64,000 nucleotides of DNA from Octopus sinensis (GCF_006345805.1 NC_043005.1:20956001-21020000), one strand, 5' to 3'; positions 638 through 48,904 are shown, counted from the first letter of the stretch. The notes: generated from the sequence alone by a model not told the origin. Numbers and translations are program-made.

Positions 638-871
638 CAAAAGATGAAGTTATTACATTTAGAAGAACTATGATACCAGGAGAGGATACTTTTGAACGAG
701 TGAATAATGTGAGCTTAAAGGAGTGTGCTCAAGCTTGTCATCATAATCCAAAATGTAATTCTTATGAGTACCATGATAAACATAAGTTCTGTGATCAAAG
801 TAATGTGACTCACTTGACTAATAACCTTCAACCCAGCAAATGGGGTTGGGATGTTTACATCATTAACCCAG
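638..871 (+). CDS. Exon PAN-A1 (4-Cys PAN/Apple domain)
   Basis: Acceptor tttctccag|ca, donor ccag|gtcagt. Encodes xKDEVITFRRTMIPGEDTFERVNNVSLKECAQACHHNPKCNSYEYHDKHKFCDQSNVTHLTNNLQPSKWGWDVYIINP, with the PAN motif C-x3-C-x5-C-x-S-Y-x-Y-x6-C. Confidence 0.88.
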
Positions 872-1159
872 GTCAGTGGTGTTTGCATTTCATTTTTTTT
901 GTGTGTTTGCATGTATTGTCATATGTGTATGTATATATGAATCTGTCTGTCTGAATGTCAGTCTTTCTGTCTATCTATCTATCTCTGTCTGTCTCTACCT
1001 CTGGATCCACTGACTGTACCTTCACGGATTTCTCTGGATATTTTTGTTGGAGTAAATCACTCCAATTTACTACAACTTTTGAACTTTTTGAGTTTATATA
1101 CAGTGATCCCAAACAATGAAGGACTTCTTGTACTGAAACCCTTTCTGGACCTTTGATTT

Positions 1160-1570
1160 AGTCCCCAAGCTGACACCTCCACTCTTCCTCGTCTGGCTGA
1201 ACTTGTTCTCTCCCTCAACTACTTCTTGTTTGCGGGCGATTTTTACCAGTAAATTCAGGACTGGCCATGGGAATGAGAATGGGCCCACACTATGCGAACC
1301 TGTTCGTTGGCTATGTTGAGGCCTAAATATTCTCACAATTCACTGGTCCCACTTCCAAACTCTACAGTCATTATAACAATGACTGTATCTGTGTGACCTC
1401 ACTCTCCCACAAACAATTAAATTCCTACCACTTTTTTGTCGAATCCTTCCATCCTGCCCTCGAATTCTCCTGCACTATCTCTAACTCTTCTGTCGAATTT
1501 TTTGACATTTTTGTCACCTCCATCCACTACAAATACACTGACTCACACTCCAGCCTTAACTTCTCTAACA
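1160..1570 (+). mobile_element. Penelope-like element, decayed reverse-transcriptase fragment
   Basis: Broken frames read GLAMGMRMGPHYANLFVGYVE...FHPALEFSCTISNSSVEFFDI..TSIHYKYTDSHS, matching PLE RT motifs GxAMG..PxxANLF and HPxIxFT..FLD..YxKPTD. Confidence 0.75.
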
Positions 1571-1648
1571 CCACCATCCTCCCAGGCACCCATCATCATT
1601 CCTATCATATCACTGACTCCTTTACTCGCGTCTCTAGTAATGACGTTT

Positions 1649-1800
1649 ACTGTATAACAGTATGGATGTTGGTGGTTATGTCAGGTTATCAATCATTTAG
1701 TTGCAAGGTGTTGACAGAACACTAGAAGTAATATTATCTTGTAACAGCGTTCGGCATGTATGTTGAAGATACTGACATTTCATTAGCATCACCATTATAA
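1649..1800. repeat. 152-bp direct repeat, copy 1
   Basis: Matches 3896..4047 with 3 mismatches by eye. Confidence 0.95.
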
Positions 1801-2651
1801 GACAGTTTAAACAGGATAAGAAAATGTGTTTTTAATAGCAACGGGAAGATATCTGTGAAAGTGAAATTAGGCAGTCATGTTTGTGTTAAGAATGTTATTT
1901 AATTTCTTCATACTAGGTTGTCTGTATTCTCTCATTGACAAAATCTTGAGTATAACTTTATAAGGTGTACGCATATAAATCTTTAGTTAATTCATTTTCC
2001 TTATGATAATATGATGAGAGTTCGTACAGGTAAATACCAAGCGAAGAACTGGATTTAAGACTAATCATTTATATACAGAAAGTCAAAATATTTACAGTTA
2101 ATTTATCACAGCATAATAGTGATAGGAAAAATTGCAGTACTTATCTTAAAGAAGAAAAAACATGTTTTGAAAGAGTCTTTTGTGGGATAGATGATAGGAA
2201 AATTTTCTTAACTAGTTCCTGAAAATTACTCTAAAAAACGGTTTAGAAAGGCATGACATAAGGTCATGAAGATGACCGTATATACAGAATAAGTTACAAG
2301 GTCATGTGTGGTAAACTGTCACTGAATAATTTCCCAAAAATCAGTGTTTTATAACTACCGTATACCTTATTCTAGGAACCTCTCCTCATGGAAAAAAAAT
2401 GTTTCACAATGATTAGAATCAACATATGAACAGTAAAATTGACCAATGCAAAAACATAAGACCTTTATAAACAAAAGACAGCCGACACAACTATGGCATC
2501 ATGCTGCTGCTAAATTCTTAACCGTTACAACTGCATCGCCTGCTCTCTCTGTTCTTCCCTGTACTTGAGTTGAAAGGGATGCTACTTGGCTCACTGGTGC
2601 ACTTAACATCTCTGAGACATCTGACTCAGCAATGACACCCCAGTCTCACAC

Positions 2652-6824: not shown

Positions 6825-8880
6825 CTAGCAGAGACACCCGCCGTTGCTTGGGATTAAAATGGCATAGTTTGTATATAATATATTACATTTATGTTGAAAC
6901 AGGTGATATAGGAATGTGCATCATTGACAACAAAACATTTGTGGAGTAAATGTTGGGCTAATTTGACTGGTAGTTTTGGCAATGTTACCTGACCACCTGC
7001 GTAGCACATACCATTTGTTTCATTTGAAAATTTTAAAGTTCTCTAGAAAAGAGAGTTTGTGTTTAGCACATGAATTTGGACAGAGTTATTATTTTTATAA
7101 CAATGGGATGGATCATATCTGAAAACAACTTCAGGAGTTGTGAAGAACAAATTTGTACGTAGTCTGTTTCTGAGAGCTATTCTATTGGACCTCTGTCTAA
7201 TCATTAAAACATTGATTTAATGATGCAGCATTAAGTGCTACAACATGCATTTACTGATGTTGAGAAATTCTCATCTAGCTTCTCTCTTCAGACTCTTGCC
7301 TTCGGTTTTCTACAATCCGCCTTGCTTTATACTTGTTTCTGGAGAGATTACGTCTTTTCTTTGGAGGCATATTTTTCCCAATATTGTAAACAAAAAATTA
7401 TTAATATGGAAAGAAATTATACATTAATCCCTATTTTTGTAAGCAGTTGTATCCGTAAAAATTTTATTTGAAGAAAGCAGAAATTGAAAGAAGAGAAAGT
7501 GAAAAGGACAAAGAAAGAAAGTGAAAGATGTATGTATGTCTAAATGAAATGGACGTGTGTGTGAGTGTGCTCATGCTTGCATGTGTGTATGTGAGAGAGA
7601 AAGAGGGTGAGAGAGATAGAGTGAGTGAGTGAAGGTGTGTGTTGTGATGATTGGTGTCTTTTAAGGTACACGCAATATAGGAAATGTGACGTCATCACAT
7701 AAAATTTTAACGATAGTTGATTTCTGGAAAAAATGATTTAAAATCCAAATATGTGAATGGAAATTAAGTTTAATTTGTAGCCAAAATAGTACCAAATCAT
7801 TTGATAATCCATATGTCAAAATCTGTAACTTAGTTTTGGAAAGCATAAGGAATATATTGGGTTGTCCGCTAAGTTCATGCCGATTTTTAAAGGAAAGAAA
7901 AAGGTCAATAAATACTTGCCATTACATTTTTAATCAACCAAATATGAACCATTTTGTTGCACAATGCGTCTCCATCTTTCCTTTAACTTGAAAAATACCC
8001 TCTTCCCAGAATTGAAATGGTTTCATGGCAAAGAATTCATCAAGGTATCTTTTTACATCATCCAAAGAATTGAAATTTTTACCATTACGACTATTCTGCA
8101 GAGACCTGAATAAATGGAAATCTGAAGGAGCAATATCTGGTGAATATGGAGGGTGGGGTAACACATCCCAGCCGAGCTGCAGCAATTTTTGTCTGGTTCC
8201 CAAAGCATCAAGTGCCGAAAATGAACTTTCTTATCTTCCATTTTAAAGGATTACAGAATTAACACAGATTATAGGAAAATAAACCTTCTTCCATGAAAAG
8301 ATGGCTTAAACTGTCCTCTAAATGGAGATGTAGTCAAATCCTATTTTATCAACTCAACCATGTTCTAAAATAAGTTGAAAGGTAAGCTACTATAAATCGG
8401 CATGAACTTTCTGAACAACCCAATATAATATCAATGAGCAGACCTTTGCATGGTAGCTAGACCTGGAAGAAATAGTAGCCAAATCTCCCTCAAAACACGC
8501 TACTGACAATTCTTCCTATTATGTAGTTTGAATTACAAACTGTACTAAAAATTAAGATTATTAACCCAACAGAGAGAGGAAAGAAGAGAGACAGCATAGC
8601 GACAGTTTTGGCTGACTGTCATCTTGTACTCCCCTTGTTGCTTGCAAAATGGTATGTCTGGTTGTGTGAGCAACTGGTTGTTTTAATGGTGGAACAAACA
8701 GGTCATTAAAGATTACAAAAATAGCGATTCTCACTTTGAAACTAACGATTTTGAAAATCTTTTTCAATTATGGAATGCCCCGCTCTCTCATGTACCCATG
8801 TTTAAAATTTCAGTGCAAATGGATGAATAATACTTGAGTTATGAGCGCACAAACAGACTGACAGAACAGATTTTATATAT
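6825..8880 (-). mobile_element. Probable Helitron-like element with nested mariner (boundaries uncertain)
   Basis: CTAG plus hairpin (cccgccgttgcttggg) at 6825, and a typical opposite end cagactgacagaacagattttatatata near 8850-8880. That both ends belong to one element is inference. Confidence 0.4.
7857..8423 (-). mobile_element. Internally deleted mariner (Tc1/mariner) transposon, 567 bp
   Basis: 30-bp TIRs at 7857-7886 and 8394-8423 (26/30 identical) with TA on both sides. Transposase C-terminus LGWDVLPHPPYSPDIAPSDFHLFRSLQN at 7934-8203 on the minus strand. Confidence 0.92.
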
Positions 8881-11028: not shown

Positions 11029-11160
11029 TACATACATACATACATACATACATACATACTTACATACATACATACATACTTACATACATGCATACATACA
11101 TACATACATACATACATACATACATACATACATCTGTCCATTCTTCCATACATACATACA
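10925..11160. repeat. (TACA)n/(CA)n compound microsatellite
   Basis: Seen directly, about 170 bp upstream of Sushi1. Confidence 0.95.
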
Positions 11161-11332
11161 AAAAATAAATACATATTTGCATGTTTGCATGCTGTTAAGT
11201 ATATTTTTATATTCCAGTGCAGAATTGTCAGTTTGATTCACTTTCTTGTAATGTTTTTTTTTTAATTCCTTATTCTCACCTGCCTTTAAACATGCAAGCA
11301 CCATTAGTGTAAATTTCTCTTTCCAATTCCAG

Positions 11333-11503
11333 ATTATTCGCAAATTGAGTGTGGACCTCCAAAAGAAATTGTTGGTTCAGTGAAGTCCTATAATTCCACC
11401 TTGTATAAATCTGAAGTCACCTATACTTGCCCAAAAGGAGAAAAACTGAAGTCAATGTGTGAAAAGAACAATGAGTGGACGCCAGTTGTATCTTCTTGTA
11501 ATG
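11333..11503 (+). CDS. Exon Sushi1 (CCP/SCR domain)
   Basis: Acceptor ttccaattccag|at, donor aatg|gtaata. Encodes xYSQIECGPPKEIVGSVKSYNSTLYKSEVTYTCPKGEKLKSMCEKNNEWTPVVSSCN, with the CCP pattern CGxP...VxYxC...C...W...C. Confidence 0.88.
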
Positions 11504-12609
11504 GTAATATAAAATGCTTGTTGCTTTCTAAAAGACATAACTGTGAAGTAAATTTTCAACTACACAGCCAAAAACTCCATGTAAAATCACATTGTTGTTA
11601 ATCAAACTTGTTGTCTCCACAGTTATACTGCACCTCATCTTAGTTGTTTTGCTCTTAATTTCTCACTTGAACTTTTTCATCCATACTTTGTGTTATCAAT
11701 CAAGACCCTCCACAATACCTTGTGCCCAACTTTACCAAAAGTTGACAATCCTCTGAAAAAAAGAAAAAGATGAGGATGATTCTGCAATATTCATTAATAT
11801 TGCAGGACAACTGCACTATCAAAATTCACCCTGACAACCATGGATAAGTGAGCTCTGCCATTATTGTTCTCTAAACCTACATGTTTATGCCATATAGTTT
11901 TCATTCACTCAAGCCCTTTTTGCTTGTTTTACCTTACTTTCAATAATTATCTCTAAAGTCAGTAACTTCCTTTTGCTTCTCACTTTCTTTGCAACTGAAA
12001 CTTTGAAAATACTAATAAGGGATTGGCTAAGCAAGAAAGTCACAGTAATCTGATCTATCATCCGTATCCACCTTGCAACCTCATTTACTATTGCCACCAA
12101 CCAGGAAAATTGACTTCTTTGATTGGTTGAAGGAATGTGTGAAGCAATCAGCTTCATAGGCTTGTCTCATATCCAGATCTATCTCATGCAGAAGACCATC
12201 TGTTTGACATAACTCTACAAGTTAGCAGTATATAGAAAATGAAAGAGTGCATGCAATATTATTTCATTTTACCACAAGTATTTGGAACATTTTTTGTGAT
12301 GCACTTTTATGTCTAGATTTTATCTTGGGCCAGTAGAGCCCTTTTGTAGCACTGCTGAGCCAAGCACTTCAGAATATTGTCCATAGAATTCCCTGAGAAA
12401 AAGCATTGAAAAAGGAATTGCCATTTTATTTTCATTGCTGCTCAAAGCAACCCTGAGAGTATCAATATATTGTTAGAATGGAACACCTACAAATCTCATT
12501 GCTCAGGTCACTTTTGACGTAGCATAAAATGAGATGTGTGTCCTAGTCTTTTTAAGGCTTTTGAGTGTGATTGAAGGAAATTGTGCTTATAAGTCTAACA
12601 TATTGTATG

Positions 12610-14195: not shown

Positions 14196-14432
14196 ATTCT
14201 GCGATCCATTTTGTGAAAGTAAATGATGCATCTCTGGATGTGACGGGGAAAATATTGAGTAAGAATGCAGTAACAGCAGACGCTTGTGCAGAAAGATGTC
14301 TTTCTGATGAAAATTGTTTATCATTTGAGATGTCTAAAGGAAATGGTAAATGTTACTTATTGAAGCAAACAGCAGCTTCCTCCAAGAAAATAAAAACAGA
14401 CAAAAGCAGAGATTATTACCAACGAGTAAAAT
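14196..14432 (+). CDS. Exon PAN-B1 (4-Cys PAN/Apple domain)
   Basis: Acceptor ttttaactctag|at, donor aaaat|gtaatt. Encodes xSAIHFVKVNDASLDVTGKILSKNAVTADACAERCLSDENCLSFEMSKGNGKCYLLKQTAASSKKIKTDKSRDYYQRVK, with C-x3-C-x5-C-x-S-F and a terminal DYYQR. Confidence 0.87.
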
Positions 14433-20449: not shown

Positions 20450-20680
20450 CTGACAAGCCTTTGCAGATTAAAAAAGTTAGCATACAAGAGAAGGATACTA
20501 TTGGAAGGCTTAGAAATGTGAACTTAAAGACATGTAATGAAGCTTGCCATCAGTATCCGGGATGTAATTCTTATCAGTACAATGAGAAGGCTAAATTCTG
20601 TGATATGAGCAATGCAACTGAGTTGACTGGTAACTTTAAACCCAACAATGGTAGTTGGGATGTGCACATAATTAACCCAG
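20450..20680 (+). CDS. Exon PAN-A2
   Basis: Acceptor ttttttcag|ct, donor ccag|gtctgt. Encodes xDKPLQIKKVSIQEKDTIGRLRNVNLKTCNEACHQYPGCNSYQYNEKAKFCDMSNATELTGNFKPNNGSWDVHIINP; paralogue of A1. Confidence 0.88.
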
Positions 20681-31168: not shown

Positions 31169-31211
31169 AATAATAATAATAATGATATTATTAATAATGA
31201 TAATATTAATA

Positions 31212-31243
<32 letters not shown>

Positions 31244-33700: not shown

Positions 33701-33749
33701 TTTCTTTTAAGTAATAAGGGTTTCTGTCACCCACCACACTCTATCATCC

Positions 33750-34860
33750 AAATAGACTAGACTCTGGTGCATATTGATTCCACTGCAGATGCTGATTGCC
33801 TATACTTGAAGTGAGCAAATGAAAGAAGAGGACTGATAAGTGTGGAAGACTGTGTGCATATCGATCTTAATGAAAGATTAATGAAATACCTGGCCCAAAG
33901 TAAGGAAACCTTGCTAGTGACAGTTAGGAATGACAGAGTATTGAAAGCAGAGAAAAAAGGAAAAACAAAGGAAGAAGTGCAAAATGGACCTGAAGAAGAA
34001 TTATGCAAGAAGGAACTATACCATCAATTCCATATAGCTACAACAAAAGTAGTTGGAAAAATGTGGAATTGGCTGATGAAAGGAACACTAAAAAAGAGAC
34101 CAAGAGCACTATGCTGGCAGTGCAAGACCAAGCTTTGACCACGAACCTGAAGGTCAACCTGAGGAATAAGCAAGTACCTCTGCTGTGCCGCATCTGCAAT
34201 ACAGTGGATGAAGCCTTTGCCCATATTACATGTGAATGCCCTACACTTGCCCAAAACCACTACAATTTATGGTGACAGGATCAGGTAGTGAAGTGGTACA
34301 TTGGAAACTGTGCAAATAGTGGTGTCTAGAGAGAAGTAAGGCTTGGTATGAGCATGAACCACAGAGAGTGGCAGAGGCGGAGACTAGCAAAATCTTCTGG
34401 GATTTGCCAATCAAAAGAGATCAAGTGCTAGAGCATAACAGACCAGACCTATTGGTGCTAGACAAGATGCACCACATATGCTATATAGTCAACATTGTTT
34501 GTTCCTCTGACCCATGAATAAACAAGAAGGAAGATGCAAAGATAGATAAATACAACCCCCTTAAGTACAAAATAGTCCAGCTATGGAAAATGAAGATGAA
34601 GATTGTGCCAATTATTGTTGGGTCCTTGGGAACAGTATCAGAAAGCATCAAGGAGAATATAAAGGAAATTGGAATAGAGGGCCCAGTAGAACTACTACAA
34701 AAGTTGTACCTCCTAGCCATGGCCAGAATATTAGGTTGCTGAAAAGAATGGATAGCATGGTACCATAGGCTGCAGGTAGCAAGCACTCTATGCATCCAAG
34801 ACTCCAGGTGCTGCAGCAAAACCTGTGATAAAGAGTAATATTAATAATGGTAATAATAAT
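33750..34860 (+). mobile_element. Decayed R4/Dong-like LINE 3' part
   Basis: RGLISVEDCV, AVQDQAL, LCRICNTVDE..HITCECPTLA, RPDLLVLDK, KIVPIIVGSLG; AAT-rich tail. Confidence 0.78.
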
Positions 34861-34929
34861 ATGGAGTTTGAATTATAGACTGGAGTGGAAATGCTATAAA
34901 GAAACTTGACATAAAAACTAGGAAGCTTT

Positions 34930-35900
34930 TGATGACGTATGGAGCCTACCATCCAAAATCTGATGTCAACCGGCTACACTGGAGGACAACCAGGCTGGAA
35001 GAGGCTTAATAGCAATAGAAGAATGTGAACAGATGGAAAAAAAATGAGTTGTAGAGTAGTTATTGAGCAGCACAGAAAATCTACCAAAGACATTTTGTAA
35101 AGAACAGGCGATCAAATGCATAATAGGAGAAAAGGACAAGAATGAAATACAAAGAAAGCAATTCAGACAGATTGAAGAGAAACTTCTGCATGGCCAATTT
35201 TGGAGAGCCACTGAAAATGTGTGTGGAATAAAATCCTGAGCTTGCTTAAAAAATGAGCAATTAAAAAAAGAAACAGGGAGCCTATTTGTAGCAACAGCGC
35301 AAGATCAATCAATGAAAACAAACAACTTGAGCAAAAATTTATATGGAGAGAATGTGTCAGAAACATGTAGAAGTTGCAAAACTTGAAATGAGACAGTAGC
35401 GCATATTGTGGAAAAATGTCTTATGTTGGCACCGGAAGAATATAAGAAATGGAGGCACAACCAGATTGTAAAAGTTATAAACTGGAAACTGTGTCAGAAG
35501 TGGGGATTTGAAGCTGGAAGCACATGATACATTCTTCAAGTTGAAAGAGTATTGCAGTCAGAAAATATAAAGATTTTGTGGGACTTTCTTTTTCAAACAG
35601 ATAAGAAATTCAAAAATAATAGACCAGACAAGTGATTGTAGTAAGGAAAAGTGAAGTTACTTAGCGACCCATCAGACAAAAGAGGAAGAAATGTATTTTG
35701 AAATAGTAAGAATTTGGGGCATGCGAACAGTAAAAGTTATGTCTATATAACTGGTGCATGGGGGATTGGAAGCCAATGTATAGACACATGGCTGAAGGAG
35801 ATTGAATTAGAATGCCTGGTAGAGCTCCTACAGAAGATTTTCTCTCTTAGTGAGAGCAAGGAATATGAAAAGGGTTTGAATAACTTGAAAGACTGCAGAA
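34930..35900 (+). mobile_element. Second decayed R4/Dong-like LINE 3' part in tandem
   Basis: YHPKSDVNRL...GRGLIAIEEC, LLHGQFWR, AQDQSMKT, CRSC..ETVAHI..C, in broken frames. Confidence 0.72.
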
Positions 35901-36149
35901 AAATTGTGAATACCTAAGGTTATATGTAGTAACCTGCTATCTACATAATTCCAACCAGGAATAAGACTGAACCAGAGCTAGAAGAGGTAAAATGAGGATG
36001 ATGATGACATTTTTTTGCCACAAAGGCGAAAGATGAGGGAGACAATACAAAGACAGACACAAAATGATAAAAAAAGAGGAAGTATACATGGTGTACACTT
36101 AAAAAAAAGGATCATATGCATAACATACAAAGGTTAAAAAAAGAATGTG

Positions 36150-37350
36150 GCAGGGACAGTGATGCAGATGTGGCCCTCCTGATGCAGGAAGACCTCTAGG
36201 GATAATTGAGGAACCCCACTGTCCAAAATTTCCCTGAAACCTCAAGAGCAAGCATCATATCAAGTTCCTTCTCTCTGACTTACTGATCTACACTCTCAAC
36301 ATTTTCACAACTTTCACCCACCTTTCTGGTAACTCAGTCAAGGACAGCAATTCCCCCTCCACTCTCAATTTCGTTTTCAAGTGAAATTTGAAGAAGTCAG
36401 TGAGAGTTCTACCAAAGAGTAATGTATCCATCCTCATGCCTTTCAGCGTTGTCCACCAACTAACCTCTTTTCCATAGCCACCAGGCAAAGGAAAACTGCC
36501 CTGCTTGCCCAATTGAAGGAGGGTGGTAGGGCAACTATTACTACAGACTCACCAAACAGACGGATCCATCCCTCATGTGAAAGCAGCTGTTCGGCGTAAC
36601 CCCACAAGTCAGAAATGCCTGGACACTGAAAGAGAGCATGCAGAACGGTTTTGTCACTTTGGATGTATCTCAGACAAGCACATCCATGTCTGTAGAATTT
36701 ATTTTGAACCAGTAGTGCCCTCTGGCAGCACTGCCTGGCCAAGGACAACTGGAAATTATCCATGACAGTTCCTGAATACAATGTCCTCCAGAACAGACTA
36801 GCAAGTTTATTTATGTCAGAGTTTCCCCAAGAAATAATCCTTTATAAACTTCTAAAGCACATGCCGTTCTCAATCCCGTTTCCCAAATGGTAAAGGGCTG
36901 AGAGTGCCTGACTATATTCCAAATAAGAGAATCTCCAATCTGGTCAAGCAGTAACTGGGACAGTGTGCGACAGTCAGGTGATGAATGATAACAGAGATGA
37001 TGTAGGCATTTACCACTTCTACCTGACCTTTCAGGGACAACTTTCTCTCAGCCCATTTCTGGGTAAGGCTGGCTATCCTGTGTGCCACCTCATCCCAGTT
37101 CTTATCAATCTGGAGATTGGGACCAAACTAGACCCCAAGCAGTTTAACTGGTTGATTGGTCCAGCATCTGATGGTGTTGTCCTGCCTCTTCAGGATCCCA
37201 ACCACATACTTACCAATTTGTCAGCATTGATTTTAGCCCCTGCAACTGACTCATATTCCTTTAGGATGGTGCCAGTCATTTTTACTTCGGAGGTTTCCAG
37301 CACAATGATGGTGATGTCATCCATCTTTCCACTACAAGCATCAGGCTAGC
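36150..37350 (-). mobile_element. Decayed L1/Tx1-like LINE ORF2 3' fragment
   Basis: DDITIIV (RT YADD region) and C..Y.QSDKTVLHALFQCPGI..LW zinc-knuckle region. Confidence 0.6.
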
Positions 37351-38459
37351 AATTTTGATGAGAGGAGGTTGATTATGTTATTCCCAGTACTTGACTGGTA
37401 ATTACTTTAAGGGCCCAAAAGAAAGAAAGGCAAATTTGACATATGTGGAACTTGGCCAGAACATAATACCAGACAAAATGCTGCTAAGCATTTTGTCCAG
37501 TATGATAACTATTTTGCCATCTCATTGCTTTGATTGTAATAATGATTATTATAATTAAAATTATAAAATTTTAATAACAATAATTTTAATAAGATTATAA
37601 AAAATAATTGTTAATAATTATGGTAAAATGATAATTACAATAACAACACTAAAACTAACTGAAGCAACTGTAGCAATAACTTTAATTGTTATAAGAAGAG
37701 GAAAAGAAAAAGTATTAAGTATAAGGTTGGCAATAATAAACTATAAACTGATAGCAGCGACCAATGTTTGGTGAATAATAGCAATAACAGTAAGATATAT
37801 ATAGTGTAAGTAAAGTGTATATAGTTTATATATAGTGCAAACAAAGTGTATATAAATATATATAATGCAAATATATAGTACAAATATATAGTGTAAACAA
37901 ATATATATAGTGATGCAAGAAATATTCATGGTAGAAGAGGTGGTTATTGTACCATAGTAGGCCTTACATAGCAGAGTGATAATAAACAGGTAAGAACAAC
38001 AGCATGCAGTAAACAATGTCAGTAATGATGATGATTATAACAAAAAAAAAGGCAGTGTATCTTTGGTGGTAGAGATGATTACAACAAAAGCTCTTACAAA
38101 ATGCATGCTGGTGCTCACAGCAGGTTAGTGGGGAATAACAAGTAAGATCTAACCTGTAGTACAGATGCTTATATGCAACGTGCTAGGGTAGGGGTGAAAG
38201 GGCATTGGGGAAAGCTACTAGACTGGAGTGGGGGTTACACTTGATAGGAGTGAAGCTGGCATTTTCTGTGATGTTTGCAATTAATTATGAGTTCATTTCA
38301 CTTATTGAGCAGGGAGGGCCATCAGCTGTGATTATGGCAATGGCCTCATACAAACAGAGTCTACAGCTGTGCCCTGGCAGTTGGCAGGGAGACCAGTTAG
38401 TGATCAGTCAGTTCTATATGCAACTGCCTTTGACTTAAAATCACATATGCACTAGGCAA

Positions 38460-39070
38460 GGGAAGCAGAAAACTAGAGCTTAGGGTCATTGAATGAGTGC
38501 TGGTGTGAAGCTATCCTCCTCTTGAAAAGCCCTGCTGTGGAATCTATAGAACAAAAATGGCATTACAAGATACCACCATGCACTTATAGACCAAACACTT
38601 TTTCACACAGTTACCACTCAGAGGACAGGATCTCACAGCTCCATAGTTATACAGACACAGGCCAAAATCAAGAGTGTGTATAGGTATGCTCCCAATATGG
38701 AGGTGGTTAGAAGATTGTACATCAGCACCAGCCATAGTGGTTCCAATTTGGTAATTTCATGTTGTGGTACTGTATACCTGGTGAGGTGCTTATGTGCACC
38801 AAGGGTGGGCATATTCATGACAGGATCGCTTAGATTGCCTGGATTAGATGTAGTTATAGTATCTGTGTACCATTTATGCATTGAAGGCAAAATGTCCAAC
38901 CCTGGACATTAGGTGTGTTGATAATAGACACAAGGTTTGTGTGGTGGAGTATAACAGTTTGACCACATTCTTATTGAAGATCCACTGGAATCTCTGCTTG
39001 GGTGGGACGTTTTTCATAAAGATCCCAAACTCCCTGCCCAGTGAATTTTTCACCAATTTGCTGAAGTGGA
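38460..39070 (-). mobile_element. Penelope-like linker plus GIY-YIG remnant
   Basis: GREFGIFMKNVPP..IFNKNVVKLLYST, CPLSGNCVKKCLVYKC, IDSTAGLFKRRIASHQHSF. Confidence 0.75.
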
Positions 39071-40029
39071 GGAAAAGAAATAAAAGAGGTATCAATCACT
39101 TACCATAGTTTTAGGTTGGTCTTTTTTTGGGGAAAACAGACTGGAGAATAGGATTTATATTTCTAGAGGGGGATACAAACAGTGTCTGAACCTAGGAGCA
39201 ACATACTAGAGGTTGACTAACTTATGCATCCACCAGCTCCTTGAACATTCCTGGCACTATCAGCAAAGGCAAGGCAGTGACCTGTCCCACTAGTGGCTTT
39301 ACCAGCTACACCAATTTTATCACCATCTCCATCTGGTATGTGCCTCCAGTGTGTATGTATCAACTTAGTTATTGCTTGTCTCTAACTTGTACTGTTTTAT
39401 CAATTACCTGATGATGTGTTTGCTTCATGTTTGCTGTATAAACTCCATCTACTGATTGCTTATGTAGAGTGGCATCATGGGTTAGCAAATATTGAAACAT
39501 ATATAACAACTGCAAAAAAGGATTGCCAGGTTATGCAAATTTTCATAATTTTCATCATAATCCTTTAACGTTGATATTCAATGCTAGCATGGATTAGACA
39601 GTTTGACAGATGCTGGTAAGCAGCAGAGTTGACTTGGTTTGTACAGCTAGATGCATTTCCTAATGCCAACCACTTTACAGTGTTCTTGGTGCTTTGAATG
39701 TGTCCACCAGCATGGGTGCTTTTATGTAGCACTGGAACAAGTGCTTATTATGTGGCACTGACACAAGTCTCTTGCAGGCTAGTCCTCTTCAATAAGGGGG
39801 AGTGGCCTTAACAGTCCTGTTGTTGAGGATGGATCTTTTTGAGTACAGCAAGGTATCAGGTATCCCAAGACTTTATCCCATGTCTTCCTGGGTTTCCCTC
39901 TTCCACATGTTCCATCCACTTTGAAAGATTGGCACTTTGTTTTGGAGCTGTTAGCATCCATTCGCATTGGCCACTCTATCAGATGTTACTCATCACTGGT
40001 CACTTTGCATCAGTTTAGCCATCACATGA

Positions 40030-40180
40030 TGCCACCACCCTCTCTTGATTAAAAGGGGACTGGAGTGACATGAAATGAAGTGCTTTGCTCAAGAACACAA
40101 CATGCTGCCTGGTCTGGGAATTGAAGCCATGATCTAGTGAACATGAGTGCAGCAGCCTAACCACTAGGTCACATGCCTTC
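40030..40180 (-). mobile_element. tRNA-derived SINE head fragment
   Basis: Degenerate copy of the 21240-21330 head (gctcaagaacacaac...ctaaccact...gccttca). Confidence 0.65.
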
Positions 40181-40354
40181 AAACACACACACAAATTCAT
40201 TTATGTATCTATGTATCTATTTATATCTGTGTACATATTTCTTCTGTTTGTCTCAGTTAATATATTCTATTTCAAATTTGTCATTATCTTCTCATGTTCA
40301 CCCTCATTCTCACATATATTAACCATTTATCTCAATTTCTCTGATCACTTCCAG

Positions 40355-40525
40355 TTTTGACAATAATTGACTGTGGACCTCCAAAAGACATTTTTGGTGC
40401 ATCAAAATCTTACAGTACCACCACCTACAAATCTGAAGTGATCTATACTTGTCCAAGAGGAGAAAAATTAAAATCAGAATGTAAGAAGGACAGTGAATGG
40501 GCTCCATTGTCATCTGGTTGTAAAG
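40355..40525 (+). CDS. Exon Sushi2
   Basis: Acceptor atcacttccag|tt, donor aaag|gtaatg. Encodes xLTIIDCGPPKDIFGASKSYSTTTYKSEVIYTCPRGEKLKSECKKDSEWAPLSSGCK. Confidence 0.88.
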
Positions 40526-41267: not shown

Positions 41268-43567
41268 CTAATAGTAATAACAGTCCCAGATTTGGGCAAA
41301 GAAAGGCAGAAAATTTTGATTTGCAGCCATTTGGTGCATGAGAGAGTTCGATGTAGCTGCCCTCATCTGCACCTCCTGCCGTGAAGTTGGTTCATCTGGG
41401 ACACCTGACAGGAAGAGATCCAGTTCCATTTTAAAGACATCTGCATCCACCCCATGCAGGTCTCTCAGGTTCTTCGGGAGGATATTGAAGAGCTGTGGGC
41501 CACGGAAGCCCAGGCTATCACAGTATCTTGTCCTACATCTTGATGGCAAATTTGGAGTCCTAGGCACCACGCAGTGGCGCCCAGTTCTGGCATTTGTGTA
41601 ACTCTCGATGCCAAAGTTTGGGACACGTCTCTCCAGGATCTTCCAGATGTATATTATGGCATATCTTTCCTGCCTACGCTCCAAGGAATATAGTTTTAAT
41701 CTCTTGAGTCTTTCCCAGTAGCTTACATTCTGCATAGAGGCTATCTTCTTCGTGTAGCTACGCTGGATCGCCTCGAGCTCTGTGATCAACTTGACACTGG
41801 ATGGTGACCATAACTGAGAGCAATAGTCAAAGTGGCTTAGGACAAGTGTCCTCCAGAGGACCATCATGGTTTCTTGTTCTCTTGTTCTAAAGGTTCTGAG
41901 AATCCATCTGGCCAGTCGTCTACATTTCATTGCCAATTTAGCAACATGAACACGAAAGGTTGCGTCATCACTCATGTAAATACCCAGGTCACGCACTGAT
42001 TGTGCCTCTGGGATTGCTATTCCTCCGGGTCCAGTGTATTCATTGGGTATTGCATTTAGTTTTGCATGCTGATAGTTTAAAGCTTGAAACTTTTCAGCAT
42101 TGAACTGCATGCTATTCTTTTCAGCCCACTTGTATATTTCGTCCAGCTCACATTGCAGGTGCTTAGTGTCTTCAGGGTTCTGTATTGCCTGTGAAACTTT
42201 TGTATCATCTGCATAACTTGTGATCGTGGCTCTCTGCGTGGCTGAGGGCATGTCTGAGAGGGCCATTATGAACAGTAGTGGTCCCAAAACAGTGCCCTGC
42301 GGAACACCGCTCCCTATACCACCTGACTTCTATTCTTCAGAAAGTCATGAAGCCATTCTCCCAATTTTCCAACTATGCCAAGATCACGCAGTTTGTGACA
42401 TATCATTCCATGATCGACTTTATCAAAGGCCTTTGCAAAGTTGAGATATATGACTTCCACATTTGAGTGGTTGAGCAGTTGTTTCAGCACCCAGTCATAG
42501 TGTTGTAGGAGCTGAGTTAAACAGCTTCTTCCTGGTCGGAAACCATGTTGGGTGTCAGGCAGCAAGTCATTTTCTTCAAGGAAGGTGATTAGTTTCCTTC
42601 TGACTATTCGTTCCATGACCTTGCTGATGTGTGAGGTGAGAGAGATAGGTCTGTAGTTCTTGGCCTCTGCTCTGCTACCACCTTTATGAATAGGGCATAT
42701 TTTACCTTCCTTCAGTTTTTTTGGAAGTTTGCCAGCTGCTAGGAAGCTCTGAAAGAGGATCTGCAGTGGTCTTGCTAGGACTCTCTTACATACTTTTAGG
42801 AGGATTGCTGGGAATCCATCGGGGCCAATAGCTGATTCTGTTTTCATTTCATCTATGGCCTTTATTACATCGTCTTCCTTTATATCGATGTAATTTATTG
42901 TCGCCGCCTCTGATTTTATATCTGCAGTGGTAAAGAAGTCAGTTGGATTGGTGATTTGGAAATGCCCGAGGGGTGGAGTGAAAACACTCTTGAATTGCTC
43001 ATTCAGTATTTCACTTACCCTCATTGGTTTTCCTGTGAGTGTGCCATCCTCTTCAAGGAGTGGCCCTATCCTACAGTGCACCGTAGCTGTTTCTTTGGCA
43101 TACCTGTAGAAAGCTCTGGGGTTAGATTTTATGTTGTCTATAGCCCAGGCTTCTTTGTCTGCTCTTTCCTTTTCATGGGAGAGTTGCAGACATTTTTCAA
43201 TTTCTAACAGTTTTATTTTCAGGCGGGACTTTTCACTGCTTTCAATCTGTTTGTTTAGGCAATTTGAAATTTTTGTACGCCGTCTCATTAAGATTTTCCT
43301 CTCTCTGGGGATTTTGTTCTTGTGTACAGTGGCCTTTCTCTCTAGGACACATTTGTAGCATATGGCTTGCGTTACAGACATGAATTGTTGAAGTTTCACG
43401 TCGATGTCTGGTGAGGAGAGACATTTAGGCCAGTTTTGTTTGAGAATCTCTTTCTCAATTTGTTTCCAGTTTGCCTTATGGTAGTTCAAGCTGGAAAGAT
43501 TCTGAGGGTTTCTTGTAGGCTGCATGTCCGTGCTCTCTTTTGGCCCATACATGGTCAGCTCTACCAT
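41268..43567 (-). pseudogene. CR1/L2-group LINE ORF2, 5'-truncated and young, split into 417-aa and 339-aa frames by one deletion/frameshift
   Basis: NYRPISLTSHISKVMERIV, QHGFRPGRSCLTQLL, LNFAKAFDKVDH, SGVPQGTVLGPLLF, SYADDTK, RDLGI, WSP...ELEAIQR. Confidence 0.92.
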
Positions 43568-46028: not shown

Positions 46029-46268
46029 CTGTTGAGAGCCTTTTTTTGAAAATAAACGATGCAATTCTGGATGTATCTGGGAAAATATTGTGGCCTAAGA
46101 AAAATGCAACAGCAGAAGCCTGTAAAACAAAATGTCTGTCTGACATTGATTGTTTATCATTTGAAATAAATGAAGGAAGTGGTCAATGTTACTTATCAAA
46201 GGAAAGTGCAGCTTCTTCCAACAAATTAAAGTCAGCCAAAGGCACAGATTACTACCAACGAGAGCATT
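46029..46268 (+). CDS. Exon PAN-B2
   Basis: Acceptor taatttcag|ct, donor catt|gtaatt. Encodes xVESLFLKINDAILDVSGKILWPKKNATAEACKTKCLSDIDCLSFEINEGSGQCYLSKESAASSNKLKSAKGTDYYQREH; paralogue of B1. Confidence 0.87.
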
Positions 46269-47619
46269 GTAATTATTATTTATATTTTATTATTGGGCTC
46301 CTCTTTTTCTTTTGTTCTGAATTTTGTGATTCCATTTGCACTTAATAATATATAAGCAATTATTTCTGTAAGAACATTGAGAGGTTTACCAATGAGGAGA
46401 AGACAGAAATACATTCCTGTGAAAAAGATAAAAGACAAGAACTGTATACACTGTTAAAACATTTTGATACAACATGTGTTCAACAGGAATACTTTTCTCT
46501 ATATTTTCAGTTGTTTTTTTCTTTTTTTAAGTCATAAAGGAAGCAGTTGTTCTTTTACTTAAACCTGAAGAGTAGCAGCAGCAACATTTGCAGTAACGAG
46601 TTTCTATTCATTTGCCAATTTTGACATGACTTATTGCTGGTACAGCACAGTGTTTCACAAGGGATGTTATGTTCTACATAACACGATATACAAAATAACG
46701 GAGAAAAAATGCCAATCTACAGAGTCATGTATTTTGTACATTTTGACATGGTTGCTATGTCTAGATACCCTTCCTATCATCAACCATTATACCACATGAA
46801 GAAAGTACATTTTCTCATGCTGCTATAATTAGAGACACTTTACTAGGACTCAAAAGTACTTTACCTTATATAGGTTTGTATTCAGACTAGTTCCATAGCA
46901 TTAAAAATATAAGAGCCAGCAAATTCACTCAGTTTGCTCTTAAAGATTTTGTGTATTCTTTTTGAAATCCTTCAACCTTGAAATCCTAGACATGAGGGAA
47001 AATTCACTAGGTTTATTGATTGTAATATTAAGATACTTGTGCATGCAAGTATGTCATTACTATCATGATAAACCTTTTGGGCCAAAAAGAAAGTTTGGCT
47101 ATTTCTTTGTGAGGAACTTCAAGTAGGCTGGAATGAAAGAAATTACTGCAATATATACCCTGGGCCCCCTCAAAAAGTTCAAACTTATTCACAGATTATT
47201 TTCGTACCGAGACAGTTTCAACTAATATGAACAGCCATCCCCATAAAGGGACAGGAATCAAGAAATTTGATTTAAACATAAAGATTACTAGTAAGATTTT
47301 TATTGAAAGTGAATTAACTTACAAAATAGCCATGGTTATTATTTTTAAAAAATTAGTTATTCATATTTTGTCCTGACAGCAAGAAAAGTATTTACACAAA
47401 CAAATGACTAAACTGAAACAAAATGAATTATTCTTGGTTGGCAAACAACTTAGACTGCGCTTTGTTACTGAAAACTATAATGATGGTATTGGTGGTGGTA
47501 ATGGTGGCAGCAGTGTTGAGTGGATAGTAAAAAGTGTAGTTTCTTTTCTTAATTTAACCTAATTTTTTATATTGCCTATCAGTTAAGGTATGTACATCAG
47601 TACAATTATTCATTGTCTG

Positions 47620-47960
47620 CTCACTTGAAAATAGATATTTGTTAATAAACTATGAATGTATGCTAACAAGAGAAAGAATGAGACAGTATAGGCAATAAAA
47701 TTAAGAGAAGCATACTGTTGAATCACTAGAACAATTGTGGAAACATCAAAGAATATTGAGTGAATATTTACAACGGATATGTTCAAAATAGTAATAAAAT
47801 GAAAATGAGAGAAAACATTAAAAAAAAACCCTGTAAACATATGGTTGAAAGTTACAACATTGGTGATGTGAATATTCTCTGTAATCATTGTGAAGATTGT
47901 AGATTTGTAAATGAACCTCTCAACTGCTGAAAGAATGGGAAAATCATGCTCCTTCAATTA
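47620..47960 (+). mobile_element. Remnant of Helitron Rep/helicase N-terminal region
   Basis: 47841-47960 reads MVESYNIGDVNILCNHCEDCRFVNEPLNC*KNGKIMLLQL, resembling the Helitron RepHel motif IG.M...C.HC....F..E....CC..GKV.LP.L; upstream RERMRQYRQ. Confidence 0.55.
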
Positions 47961-48670
47961 TATACATTTAAAAGGTGCTTTTAAATGTATATAATGCAGA
48001 ATATACAATTTATAAAGAAACACTAATTTTTGTGGCTCTGTATAAACTTACAACAATCTAGAAATTTTTGTACTTACTGCATAATTTTCACAGTTATTGC
48101 TAGTTGTTGTTATTATTTTATAGATATTTTAGAAATATTATATAGTTATGTAGAAGTAACATATAAATGAAATTTTGAATAAAATATGAGATGCTTTGTT
48201 ATTAAAATGGACAATTCATTATAATATCATGATCCATCCACAAAATAACTTTCCAACATAAGTTAGCCTCCTTAGAATAAATGTGAAACTGATTGCCTCA
48301 TGAGTCATACTCAAACCTTTGCCTGAATGTTTTTATTTTGGATAATCCATTTAGACGTTCTTCTCCTGATGGTGTGCTCTTATTTAAGATTGCCTGGTTG
48401 TTACAACAGACATCTTAGTTAATCATGTGTTAAAGGAAGTTTTTACCTTACAAAAGCACACCATCAGGTTAGTGATGTACAAAAAATTGTCTGCAACCTA
48501 GAAATTGAGACAAGTTTTAAAATGAGTCTTAAGGATGTTCTAAGACTCAGGTAAATTGTTTTGTAACTTGTGGATCATTTTGTGAATCAGTTATTGGTGT
48601 ATAATGCATGTATGTGGGCATATGAATGTGCATGTCAGCTTATAAAATGTATTTCTTCTTTTTCTTCCAG

Positions 48671-48904
48671 CCAATAATGAACATTTCATGCTTAAAAAAG
48701 TTAGCATACCAGTGGGGGATATTTTAGGACAGCATAAGAATAAGACCTTAAAGGAATGTAATGAAAAATGCTACAGATATCATGGCTGTAATTCTTACCA
48801 GTACAGTGAGGAAAATAAATTATGTGTTCTGAGTAATGTGACTCAGTCGACTGATAAACTTAAACCCAGCAAAAAAAAAGTAGATGTGTACATAACTAAC
48901 CCTG
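48671..48904 (+). CDS. Exon PAN-A3
   Basis: Acceptor ttttcttccag|cc, donor cctg|gtcagt. Encodes xNNEHFMLKKVSIPVGDILGQHKNKTLKECNEKCYRYHGCNSYQYSEENKLCVLSNVTQSTDKLKPSKKKVDVYITNP. Confidence 0.88.

What the first reader, a model, noticed from the sequence alone, without database searches (positions are those of the whole stretch)
638..48904. PAN-A paralogues show many amino-acid changes but few silent changes, a signature of diversifying selection
Hand count over the 70 alignable codons. A2 vs A3: 34 residues differ, yet only 4 of the 36 conserved-residue codons differ silently. A1 vs A2: 33 residues differ, and 8 of 37 conserved codons differ silently. Cys, CNSY, SNxT, DV and NP are fixed while the positions between them vary. 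About 50% protein divergence with about 10-20% silent divergence points to dN/dS near or above 1. Established: this pattern is typical of immune receptors, gamete-recognition proteins and toxins. Caveat: counting only invariant codons and AT-biased codon use both lower the silent estimate.
Basis: partly seen in the sequence, partly recalled or inferred. Interest (0 to 1): 0.8.

Follow-up and report, generated by a model that had tools for sequence, protein, structure and literature searches.

The report
Fast-evolving PAN repeats in giant octopus gene
The three "PAN-A paralogues" are repeated exons of one very large octopus gene built from PAN-Sushi-PAN modules; they change protein sequence at close to the neutral rate (dN/dS about 0.7), but adaptive diversification of PAN-A is only weakly supported, and the clear signal is in the neighbouring PAN-B exons.

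Summary
The three PAN-A copies are phase-1/phase-1 exons (638-871, 20450-20680, 48671-48904). They sit on the + strand with four Sushi and two PAN-B exons, and all nine join into a 619-aa open frame. The closest relatives are Octopus proteins, and the family includes the coleoid "GON-" proteins. Squid versions are short: signal peptide, PAN-B, PAN-A, Sushi, GON. Octopus has amplified the PAN-B/PAN-A/Sushi unit into an array of at least 0.5 Mb.

"Few silent changes" does not hold per site: 21-47% of synonymous sites differ and dS is 0.4-0.7. Model-based omega is:
- 0.57-1.15 for pairs within the window;
- 0.74 for the three copies jointly (95% CI about 0.41-1.37);
- 0.66-0.76 across 33 PAN-A exons from four species.

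dN is about 0.85-0.9 of intron divergence. About 30% of PAN-A sites are strongly constrained and about 60% evolve near omega = 1. Only 2-4 sites look positively selected (p about 0.01-0.03), and an ortholog-only test does not confirm them. PAN-B shows the strong, replicated signal (2dlnL about 100). The high omega is gene-wide. It reflects mostly relaxed constraint on a disulfide scaffold, with real positive selection mainly outside PAN-A.

The parts
638..871 (+). PAN-A exon A1 (77 full codons, phase 1-1)
   Evidence: AG/GT boundaries and open frame. Pfam PAN_1 E 1.4e-8. AF2 model pLDDT 91.9 with a PAN fold, TM 0.72-0.80 to the plasminogen PAN and HGF N domains. Orthologs at O. sinensis L002:35509-35742 and O. 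bimaculoides L001:38333-38566.
11333..11503 (+). Sushi/CCP exon S1 (phase 1-1)
   Evidence: Pfam Sushi E 3e-4, above the gathering score. 93% aa identity to the O. sinensis ortholog.
14196..14432 (+). PAN-B exon B1 (phase 1-1)
   Evidence: Pfam PAN_1 E 2.6e-10. AF2 pLDDT 92.1. 96% aa identity to the O. sinensis ortholog.
20450..20680 (+). PAN-A exon A2 (76 full codons, phase 1-1)
   Evidence: Pfam PAN_1 E 1.4e-7. Orthologs at L002:54362 (95% aa) and L001:16852 (72% aa).
40355..40525 (+). Sushi exon S2
   Evidence: Pfam Sushi E 2.3e-4. Ortholog at L001:21629.
46029..46268 (+). PAN-B exon B2
   Evidence: Pfam PAN_1 E 8e-11. Ortholog at L001:22412.
48671..48904 (+). PAN-A exon A3 (77 full codons, phase 1-1)
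   Evidence: Pfam PAN_1 E 4.3e-9. Ortholog at L001:24930 (85% aa).
56590..56760 (+). Sushi exon S3
   Evidence: Pfam Sushi E 7.5e-5. Ortholog at L001:27099.
62965..63135 (+). Sushi exon S4 (the second Sushi of an A-S-S-B module; the matching PAN-B lies beyond the window end)
   Evidence: Pfam Sushi E 6.5e-6. Ortholog at L001:28485, followed there by a PAN-B exon at L001:31439.

Best explanation
The window is an internal 64-kb slice of one very large Octopus gene. It has no start and no end inside the window.

The gene is a tandem array of exon modules, PAN-A, Sushi (sometimes two) and PAN-B. Each domain is one symmetric phase-1 exon. In O. bimaculoides the array ends in GON-domain exons. It derives from the short coleoid 'GON-' gene (signal peptide, PAN-B, PAN-A, Sushi, GON) by repeated duplication of the PAN-B/PAN-A/Sushi unit. 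That step is inferred, with unequal crossing-over between symmetric exons as the likely route.

Each PAN-A exon encodes a self-contained 77-residue PAN/apple domain with two disulfides. Selection holds the scaffold: four Cys, N40-S41-Y42, Y44, K49, S54, the N-x-T sequon at 55-57, T60 and D71. The remaining roughly 60-70% of positions drift at about the neutral rate. This produces about 50% protein divergence between copies and omega of about 0.7.

A small adaptive component in PAN-A is possible but weak (columns 14 and 50, perhaps 1 and 20). Clear positive selection acts on loop and edge positions of PAN-B, and less clearly on Sushi.

The product is most likely a secreted, multivalent protein or glycan binder, with each module presenting a somewhat different surface. 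Expression in the posterior salivary (venom) gland is suggested only by my recollection of where the 'GON-' homologues were recorded.

Shown: exon anatomy, family membership, fold, omega values, site classes and orthology.
Inferred: a single transcript, secretion, binding function and tissue.
For: Anatomy:
- Nine + strand exons all have AG/GT boundaries, lengths divisible by 3 and phase 1-1, and they join into a 619-aa ORF.
- No other A, B or S copy occurs in the window.
- O. bimaculoides LOC128248838 splices the same order of modules, at 78% identity over 98% of the query.

Array:
- Every fetched locus shows [A S (S) B]n on one strand.
- Neighbouring gene models are 1133-4470 aa long.
- GON exons occur only at the distal end, L003:25259-31480.

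Family:
- Relatives include GON-Abd-1, GON-SepT-1/2 and an A. pharaonis protein with the order SP-B-A-S(-S)-GON.

Fold:
-.

Rates:
- Window pairs give omega 0.57-1.15, and the three copies jointly give 0.74.
- Family M0 omega is 0.76 for A, 0.82 for B and 0.69 for S.
- Ortholog-only omega is 0.66, 0.70 and 0.69, each below 1 (2dlnL 5.4-6.0).
- Window vs O. bimaculoides: PAN-A dN is 0.114-0.127 against exon-anchored intron K of 0.136.
- Window vs O. sinensis: pooled PAN-A dN is 0.056 against orthologous intron p of about 0.06.

Sites:
- PAN-A has 22 of 77 sites significantly conserved, 4 nominally above 1 and 2 with posterior > 0.9.
- PAN-A M1a/M2a gives 2dlnL 7.3 and M7/M8 gives 9.1. An alternative topology gives 9.55 with the same two sites.
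- PAN-B gives 2dlnL 103 and 87, with 13-14 sites. The ortholog-only test replicates it on the same sites (2dlnL 10.3).

Maintenance:
- Orthologs group by module with bootstrap 98-100.
- Only about 3 of the roughly 120 exon hits are degenerate; a fourth is cut off by a locus end.
Against: - No transcript data were available, so consecutive splicing, secretion and tissue are untested.
- No signal-peptide exon was found in about 440 kb of array, but that search is insensitive.
- Public gene models are fragmentary and partly spurious.
- The site models are my own implementation. Branch lengths are fixed from M0 up to a scale factor, and there is no recombination test.
- The exons are short (56-79 codons).
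- Several 'selected' sites lie in the first four codons of an exon, where splicing constraints on silent sites could inflate omega.
- Some single ortholog pairs have omega above 1: A3 1.6-2.4 and B2 1.7-1.8, neither significant. Stronger selection on particular modules cannot be excluded.
Confidence: 0.65

Rival explanations
1. PAN-A is under pervasive diversifying (arms-race) selection, as in immune receptors, gamete-recognition proteins or toxins. On this view the variable positions between the fixed Cys/CNSY/SNxT motifs are a ligand-binding surface under positive selection.
For: - Omega is high and omega = 1 is not rejected in the window.
- Family site models prefer a class with omega about 1.8-2.0 covering 8-12% of sites (p 0.008-0.03).
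- A1 dN is at or above the flanking intron divergence against both other species: 0.085 vs 0.075 and 0.117 vs 0.088.
- A3 vs its ortholog shows 14 non-synonymous and 2 synonymous changes.
- The adjacent PAN-B in the same protein is clearly positively selected.
Against: - Ortholog-only omega is 0.66 and significantly below 1, and M1a/M2a there is not significant (2dlnL 2.5).
- Only 2 sites have posterior > 0.9, and 51 of 77 sites cannot be told apart from omega = 1.
- PAN-A has the weakest LRT of the three domain types.
- The p-values would not survive correction for three tests plus the known inflation from recombination.
Confidence: 0.15
2. The pattern is pure relaxation or decay. The repeated exons are redundant or no longer expressed and are drifting neutrally, with no adaptive component anywhere in the module.
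For: - Omega is near 1 for most sites.
- dN is close to intron divergence.
- Gene annotation is fragmentary, and some intact exons lie in no gene model.
- A few exons are degenerate.
Against: - Splice sites, phase, open frames, all four Cys and many scaffold residues are kept in 33 of 33 PAN-A, 31 of 31 PAN-B and 43 of 43 Sushi exons, despite paralog dS of at least 0.4.
- 22-25 sites per domain are significantly conserved.
- Omega is below 1 in the ortholog-only data for all three domain types.
- Each module has been retained as an ortholog in 2-3 species.
- The PAN-B omega > 1 class is strong and replicated.
Confidence: 0.1
3. The high omega is a methodological artefact. Silent divergence would be depressed by AT-biased codon usage, by splicing-enhancer constraints in short exons, or by gene conversion between repeats, so that omega is overestimated.
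For: - The exons are short and AT-rich.
- dS in A3 and B2 (0.04-0.05) is below the flanking intron divergence (0.13-0.14).
- The two O. bimaculoides A1 copies group together in the exon tree, yet the introns say only one is the window's ortholog. That hints at exon conversion.
- Splice-proximal intron flanks of the paralogs are more alike than the exons are.
Against: - Omega changes little between the F3x4, F1x4 and F61 codon-frequency models.
- Pooled ortholog dS (0.15-0.17) is at or slightly above independent intron K (0.136).
- dN alone is about 0.85-0.9 of intron K, which does not depend on dS.
- Orthologs of A1, A2 and A3 group by module rather than by species, so there has been no recent homogenisation among the window's three copies.
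Confidence: 0.1

Closest known systems
Coleoid 'GON-' proteins (UniProt names GON-Abd-1 R4G2C1 from Abdopus aculeatus; GON-SepT-1 R4G2C9 and GON-SepT-2 R4G7D8 from Sepioteuthis australis). From my own memory, not verifiable in the paper library, these come from the posterior venom-gland transcriptome study of Ruder et al. 2013, J Mol Evol 76:192.
   Same: They share homologous PAN-B, PAN-A and Sushi domains in the same cyclic order (E 5e-66 to 1e-123, 38-52% identity). The Octopus array ends in the same GON domain.
   Different: Those proteins are 451-503 aa with one module plus a signal peptide and GON. Here the module is repeated many times. The window holds 3 modules in 64 kb. The O. bimaculoides models sum to about 9,600 aa and their loci span about 0.5 Mb. 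The window contains no GON or signal-peptide exon.
PAN/apple domain superfamily: plasminogen and HGF N-terminal PAN domains, factor XI and prekallikrein apple domains, and apicomplexan microneme lectins (T. gondii MIC4, Sarcocystis SML-2)
   Same: It passes the Pfam PAN_1 threshold. The PDB profile hit to MIC4 apple domains is E 8e-9. The AF2 model has TM 0.72-0.80 to the plasminogen and HGF PAN domains. It has the helix packed on a beta-sheet and the conserved Cys pattern.
   Different: There are four Cys (two disulfides) only. The domain is not linked to kringle or protease domains. The ligand is unknown. It alternates with Sushi domains in a long array.
SVEP1 (the automatic annotation label 'sushi, von Willebrand factor type A, EGF and pentraxin domain-containing protein 1-like')
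   Same: It contains Sushi/CCP repeats in a large extracellular modular protein.
   Different: No vWA, EGF, pentraxin or HYR domains were found in any exon or homolog. PAN and GON domains are not part of SVEP1. The label reflects Sushi similarity only.
ADAMTS9 / ADAMTS20 / C. elegans GON-1
   Same: The C-terminal GON domain (PF08685) is present at the end of the Octopus array and in the short coleoid homologs.
   Different: There is no metalloprotease, disintegrin or thrombospondin repeat. The GON domain is outside this window.
Rapidly evolving tandem-repeat recognition proteins (for example abalone VERL ZP-N repeats and snail FREPs). This is an analogy from general knowledge.
   Same: They have tandemly repeated binding modules on a conserved Cys scaffold, with high dN/dS and some positively selected surface positions.
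   Different: The fold is unrelated. Here the repeats diverge independently, with orthologs grouping by module, rather than evolving in concert. No recognition function has been shown.

Membership tests
PAN/apple domain (Pfam PAN_1, PF00024) | Profile score above Pfam's gathering threshold | tested here: met
   A1, A2 and A3 score 34.9, 31.6 and 36.5 bits. B1 and B2 score 40.4 and 42.0 bits. The cut-off is 21.4.
PAN/apple domain (Pfam PAN_1, PF00024) | PAN fold: a central helix packed on an antiparallel sheet, tied by conserved disulfides | tested here: met
   The AF2 models have pLDDT 91.9 (A1) and 92.1 (B1), with a helix at 26-35 plus five to six strands. Foldseek gives TM 0.72-0.80 to the plasminogen and HGF PAN domains. 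Four Cys are invariant in all 64 PAN exons.
Sushi/CCP (PF00084) | Profile score above threshold, four conserved Cys and a conserved Trp | tested here: met
   Scores are 21.5-26.9 bits against a cut-off of 20.7. C8, C34, C44, C57 and W50 are invariant in 43 exons.
Coleoid GON- protein family | Homologous PAN-B, PAN-A and Sushi in that cyclic order | tested here: met
   GON-Abd-1 was hit at E 4.9e-66 with 49% identity. A reciprocal search with GON-Abd-1 finds the Octopus array proteins and squid GON-SepT-1/2. The sequences show the order SP-B-A-S(-S)-GON.
Coleoid GON- protein family | C-terminal GON domain (PF08685) | tested here: not met
   No GON exon occurs in the window (best tblastn E 3.1). 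GON exons are present at the distal end of the O. bimaculoides array, L003:25259-31480. The gene may therefore have GON, but the window does not show it.
Coleoid GON- protein family | Expression in, or secretion from, the posterior salivary (venom) gland | not testable with these tools
   No expression data were available. Only the UniProt names point to venom-gland transcriptomes.
Genes under diversifying (positive) selection | Gene- or domain-wide omega above 1 | tested here: not met
   PAN-A omega is 0.74 in the window (CI about 0.41-1.37), 0.71-0.76 for the family, and 0.66 for orthologs, which is below 1 at 2dlnL 5.97.
Genes under diversifying (positive) selection | A site class with omega > 1 supported by LRT (M1a/M2a, M7/M8) and replicated | tested here: inconclusive
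   PAN-A gives 2dlnL 7.3, 9.1 and 9.55 (p 0.026, 0.011, 0.008) family-wide, but 2.5 (not significant) in the ortholog-only test. For comparison, PAN-B gives 103 and 87 family-wide and 10.3 in the ortholog-only test, on the same sites.
Genes under diversifying (positive) selection | dN exceeds the neutral rate measured in introns | tested here: not met
   Pooled PAN-A dN is 0.114-0.127 against intron K of 0.136 (window vs O. bimaculoides). It is 0.056 against about 0.064 (window vs O. sinensis). Only A1 taken alone reaches or exceeds its flanking intron divergence.
SVEP1 | vWA, EGF, pentraxin and HYR domains together with Sushi repeats | tested here: not met
   Only PAN, Sushi and (distally) GON were found in exons and homologs.

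The most novel reading that the evidence does not exclude
Octopus has turned a short secreted salivary-gland protein gene into an exon-module array of at least 0.5 Mb and 45 or more modules, and this array serves as a diversity generator. It could do this in one of two ways. One is a single protein of more than 10,000 aa carrying dozens of differently tuned PAN binding surfaces. The other uses the fact that every exon is phase 1-1: modules would be spliced combinatorially between one signal-peptide exon and one GON tail. The single-module Abdopus transcript would be one such product. On this reading, positive selection on PAN-B loops, and on a few PAN-A sites, reflects an arms race with prey or pathogens.
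Probability: 0.15. Interest if true: 0.75.

Novelty: new variant of a known kind. Interest (0 to 1): 0.45.

Why it matters
If the array is expressed, it would be one of the largest tandem domain amplifications in a cephalopod genome, and a lineage-specific elaboration of a protein family first recorded from venom-gland transcriptomes.

It would offer a natural series of dozens of PAN domains on one scaffold for studying how binding surfaces diversify after exon duplication.

It also warns that current Octopus annotations cut the locus into arbitrary 'uncharacterized' or 'SVEP1-like' genes.

For the scan itself, the lesson is practical. Counting silent differences only in conserved codons understates dS. 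The high dN/dS is real, but it mostly reflects relaxed constraint, and the adaptive signal sits in a different exon class from the one flagged.

Tried and rejected
I replaced them with my own GY94/F3x4 code and nucleotide ML topologies. The code agrees with Biopython on the three window pairs.
- Global MAFFT alignment of fixed 250-bp intron flanks was too noisy because of indels and transposons.
- A collinear BLAST chain picked up a transposon HSP. I replaced it with exon-anchored HSPs. These also showed that my first ortholog choice for A1 and S1 in O. bimaculoides was wrong, and I corrected it.
- The first 'forest' design used long finite stems, which let the low-omega class couple the groups. 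I discarded it and redid it with truly independent groups.
- Paralogous introns cannot serve as a neutral control inside the window. Alignments extend only 13-49 bp past the exons.
- SE-cephalotoxin was considered as the family and rejected. Its domains are LDL-A, Sushi, TSP1 and EGF, and it is decapodiform-specific according to bioRxiv 10.64898/2026.04.09.716377.
- The literature searches and paper look-ups found no paper on a PAN/Sushi/GON array in octopus. Ruder et al. 2013 is not held.
- A search for a signal-peptide exon with the Abdopus N-terminus found nothing in any locus.
- I did not run null simulations for the LRTs or a formal recombination test.

Full report
**1. What is at the coordinates**

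The window looks like animal DNA. It is about 35% G+C and carries TA/CA microsatellites and LINE reverse-transcriptase fragments.

The finding's endpoints are exactly the first base of one exon and the last base of another. A1 is 638-871, A2 is 20450-20680 and A3 is 48671-48904. Each is preceded by AG and followed by GT, has a length divisible by three, and is in phase 1 at both ends.

Six more exons of the same design lie on the same strand:
- Sushi exons at 11333-11503, 40355-40525, 56590-56760 and 62965-63135;
- PAN-B exons at 14196-14432 and 46029-46268.

The order is A-S-B-A-S-B-A-S-S. A sensitive tblastn finds no further copy on either strand. Joined in order, the nine exons give an uninterrupted 619-aa frame. 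Pfam assigns A and B to PAN_1 and S to Sushi, all above the gathering thresholds.

**2. The 'paralogues' are internal repeats of one gene**

The joined protein's significant hits above 30% identity are all octopod proteins. The best is O. bimaculoides LOC128248838, at 78% identity over 98% coverage, and it splices the same modules in the same order.

I fetched about 440 kb around seven homologs from O. bimaculoides, O. sinensis and O. vulgaris. Every locus shows the same one-strand array [A S (S) B]n. Neighbouring gene models are 1133, 1865, 3597, 4083 and 4470 aa long.

The O. bimaculoides loci lie between 88.28 and 88.83 Mb on one chromosome. GON-domain exons occur only at the distal end, L003:25259-31480.

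The annotations are clearly fragmentary. Some models start at an internal Met of an A exon or inside an intron, and the intact exons at L001:4716-8124 belong to no model.

The window's species is none of the three. It is closest to O. sinensis, with orthologous intron divergence of about 0.06. Its divergence from O. bimaculoides is about 0.14.

**3. Family**

The first search also hit 'GON-Abd-1' from Abdopus aculeatus. A second search with that protein found squid GON-SepT-1 and GON-SepT-2 and a cuttlefish protein.

Their sequences read: signal peptide, PAN-B, PAN-A, Sushi (one or two), GON, in 451-503 aa. The Octopus module A-S(-S)-B is a cyclic permutation of that non-GON part. The simplest history is therefore tandem amplification of the B-A-S unit in front of a single GON tail.

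From my own memory, the 'GON-' names come from a coleoid posterior venom-gland transcriptome study (Ruder et al. 2013). That paper is not in the library, and no held paper describes this array.

SE-cephalotoxin is a different family, with LDL-A, Sushi, TSP1 and EGF domains.

**4. Checking the counts**

Over all alignable codons I get the following:

| Pair | Residues differing | Residues same | Same-residue codons differing silently |
|---|---|---|---|
| A1/A2 | 38 | 38 | 9 |
| A1/A3 | 45 | 32 | 7 |
| A2/A3 | 40 | 36 | 4 |

However, the identical-residue codons contain only 17.7-21.3 synonymous sites, so the silent divergence within them is 47%, 40% and 21% per site, not 10-20%. Whole-exon dS is 0.49-0.61 by NG86 and 0.36-0.78 by ML.

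**5. Model-based dN/dS inside the window**

- GY94 pairwise ML, under F3x4, F1x4 and F61 codon frequencies, gives omega 0.57-0.75 for A1/A2, 0.71-0.89 for A1/A3 and 1.10-1.15 for A2/A3. None differs from 1 (2dlnL at most 1.8). Biopython's implementation agrees.
- A joint three-taxon M0 gives omega 0.74. Omega = 0.4 is just rejected (2dlnL 4.26), while 1.0 (0.97) and 1.25 (2.84) are not. The 95% interval is therefore about 0.41-1.37.
- The window's other repeats behave alike: B1/B2 gives 0.78 and the Sushi pairs give 0.40-0.74.

**6. Orthologs and the intron control**

Orthologs group by module with bootstrap 98-100. The three A copies therefore predate the split of these species and have not been homogenised since.

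*Window vs O. sinensis:*

| Exon | dN | omega |
|---|---|---|
| A1 | 0.085 | 0.66 |
| A2 | 0.027 | 0.17 |
| S1 | 0.031 | not stated here |
| B1 | 0.016 | not stated here |

Orthologous intron p-distance for this pair is 0.051-0.106, or about 0.06 pooled.

*Window vs O. bimaculoides.* Flanking introns showed that the true A1 and S1 orthologs are the copies at L001:38333 and 41396, so I corrected the pairing. After correction:

| Exon class | dN | dS | omega |
|---|---|---|---|
| PAN-A | 0.114-0.127 | 0.150-0.171 | 0.67-0.85 |
| Sushi | not stated here | not stated here | 0.52-0.57 |
| PAN-B | not stated here | not stated here | 0.69-0.84 |

Exon-anchored intron K for this pair is 0.136 over 5.2 kb. 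PAN-A protein-changing divergence therefore runs at about 85-90% of the intron rate. Silent divergence is not abnormally low.

Paralogous introns inside the window cannot be used as a control, because alignments end 13-49 bp beyond the exons.

**7. Family-wide codon models**

I extracted 33 distinct PAN-A, 31 PAN-B and 43 Sushi exons. The alignments are almost gap-free. I built nucleotide ML trees and fitted M0 with free branch lengths.

| Domain | M0 omega |
|---|---|
| PAN-A | 0.76 |
| PAN-B | 0.82 |
| Sushi | 0.69 |

Site models used branch lengths fixed from M0 up to a scale factor.

*PAN-A:*
- M1a lnL is -4400.50, with 30% of sites at omega 0.24 and 70% at omega 1.
- M2a lnL is -4396.85, with 11% of sites at omega 1.8 (2dlnL 7.3, p 0.026).
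- M7 is -4397.33 and M8 is -4392.79, with 8% of sites at omega 2.0 (2dlnL 9.1, p 0.011).
- M8a is -4395.72.
- On a protein-based topology that shares only 18 of 30 splits, omega is 0.705, 2dlnL is 9.55, and the same two sites are picked.

*PAN-B:* M1a/M2a gives 2dlnL 103, with 21% of sites at omega 3.4. M7/M8 gives 87.

*Sushi:* 2dlnL is 36 and 33.5, with about 15% of sites at omega 2.1-2.5.

*Per site:*
- PAN-A has 22 of 77 sites significantly conserved. These include C29, C33, C39, N40, S41, Y42, Y44, N45, K49, C51, S54, N55, T57, T60, L63, D71 and N76.
- Four PAN-A sites are nominally above 1 (columns 1, 14, 20, 50). Two have posterior > 0.9 (14 and 50).
- PAN-B has 15 sites nominally above 1 and 13-14 with high posterior.
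- Sushi has 6.

**8. Ortholog-only replication**

To avoid deep branches and paralog recombination, I cut the trees into 10-15 shallow ortholog groups. I treated the groups as independent while sharing site classes across them.

| Domain | Omega | 2dlnL vs omega = 1 | M1a/M2a 2dlnL |
|---|---|---|---|
| PAN-A | 0.66 | 5.97 | 2.5 (not significant) |
| PAN-B | 0.70 | 5.68 | 10.3 (p 0.006) |
| Sushi | 0.69 | 5.35 | 0 |

The top PAN-B sites (72, 18, 31, 4) are the same as in the family analysis.

**9. Structure**

AF2 models of A1 and B1 are confident, with pLDDT 91.9 and 92.1. The A1 model matches the plasminogen and HGF PAN domains at TM 0.72-0.80. By sequence profile, the nearest solved relatives are the T. 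gondii MIC4 apple domains, at E 8e-9.

On the secondary-structure map:
- The conserved PAN-A sites are the helix, the Cys residues and the central strands.
- Candidate site 14 lies in the turn before strand 2.
- Site 20 lies in strand 2.
- Site 50 lies next to C51.
- The PAN-B sites lie mostly in loops, strand ends and the N-terminal linker.

No coordinates are returned by the tool, so I could not compute surface exposure.

**10. Interpretation**

It is a property of the whole module array, not of PAN-A specifically. For PAN-A it is explained mainly by a small constrained scaffold and a majority of sites drifting at omega of about 1.

Decay is excluded by four points:
- open frames, splice sites and Cys residues are kept in all exons analysed;
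- many sites are significantly conserved;
- omega is below 1 among orthologs;
- each module is retained across species.

Adaptive diversification is well supported for PAN-B. It is moderate and unreplicated for Sushi. It is weak for PAN-A.

**11. Caveats**

- The codon models are my own implementation.
- Branch lengths were not re-optimised under the site models.
- I ran no formal recombination test and no null simulation.
- The exons are short.
- Sites in the first codons of an exon may have depressed silent rates because of splicing constraints.
- Transcript structure, secretion, tissue and ligand are all inferred.

Noticed in passing
L001:9969-14516 and L001:38333-41566, compared with window 1-1088 and 11098-11855: O. 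bimaculoides has two A1-S1 copies. Flanking introns show that the window's ortholog is the copy at 38333/41396 (intron p 0.08-0.09, against about 0.16 for the other copy). Yet the exon tree puts the two O. bimaculoides A1 exons together (bootstrap 98). This suggests either a recent higher-order duplication or exon-level gene conversion within that species.
   Followed up: partly
window 41268-43567 (- strand): Two adjacent ORFs (339 and 417 aa) with reverse-transcriptase hits indicate a non-LTR retrotransposon in the S2-B2 intron. A 93%-identical copy lies at a non-syntenic place in O. sinensis (L002:48155-50051), so the element family is young or still active in this group. Another RT fragment lies at 59162-59503 (-).
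   Followed up: partly
window 20681-40354: The A2-S2 intron is 19.7 kb here but 4.5 kb in O. bimaculoides (L001:17083-21628). The extra DNA is (TA)n and (TATG)n-type microsatellites (25.3-29.1 kb), a 62-bp repeat unit at 26.0-26.2 kb (a related 66-bp unit occurs at 58.0-58.2 kb, outside this intron), and transposon remnants.
   Followed up: partly
L001:4716-8124; N-termini of P0001 and P0007: Public gene models cut the array arbitrarily. An intact A-S-B module lies in no model. One model starts at a Met inside an A exon, and another starts in intron-derived sequence. The locus is probably mis-annotated in all three Octopus genomes.
   Followed up: partly
L004:81804-82049 (the same stretch as L005:2350-2595) and L006:32123-32368: A shortened PAN-A variant lacks the N-terminal third and has a different C-terminal end. 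It is conserved between O. vulgaris and O. bimaculoides and is used in their gene models. I excluded it from the codon analyses.
   Followed up: no
window 46029-46268 and 48671-48904: Against O. bimaculoides, B2 and A3 show very few silent changes (dS 0.04-0.05, 2-2.5 synonymous differences). The introns around them differ by 13-14%. This could be chance with about 41 synonymous sites each, or constraint on silent sites such as splicing enhancers.
   Followed up: no
window 611-933, 20412-20740 and 48641-48938: Between the window's A copies, the 13-49 bp of intron next to the splice sites are more alike (p 0.08-0.23) than the exons themselves (p 0.25-0.31).
   Followed up: no
window 7934-8203 (- strand): This ORF contains HPPYSPDIAPSDFHLF, a motif I recognise from memory as typical of mariner/Tc1 transposases. 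It has no Pfam hit at E <= 0.001, so the assignment is unverified.
   Followed up: partly
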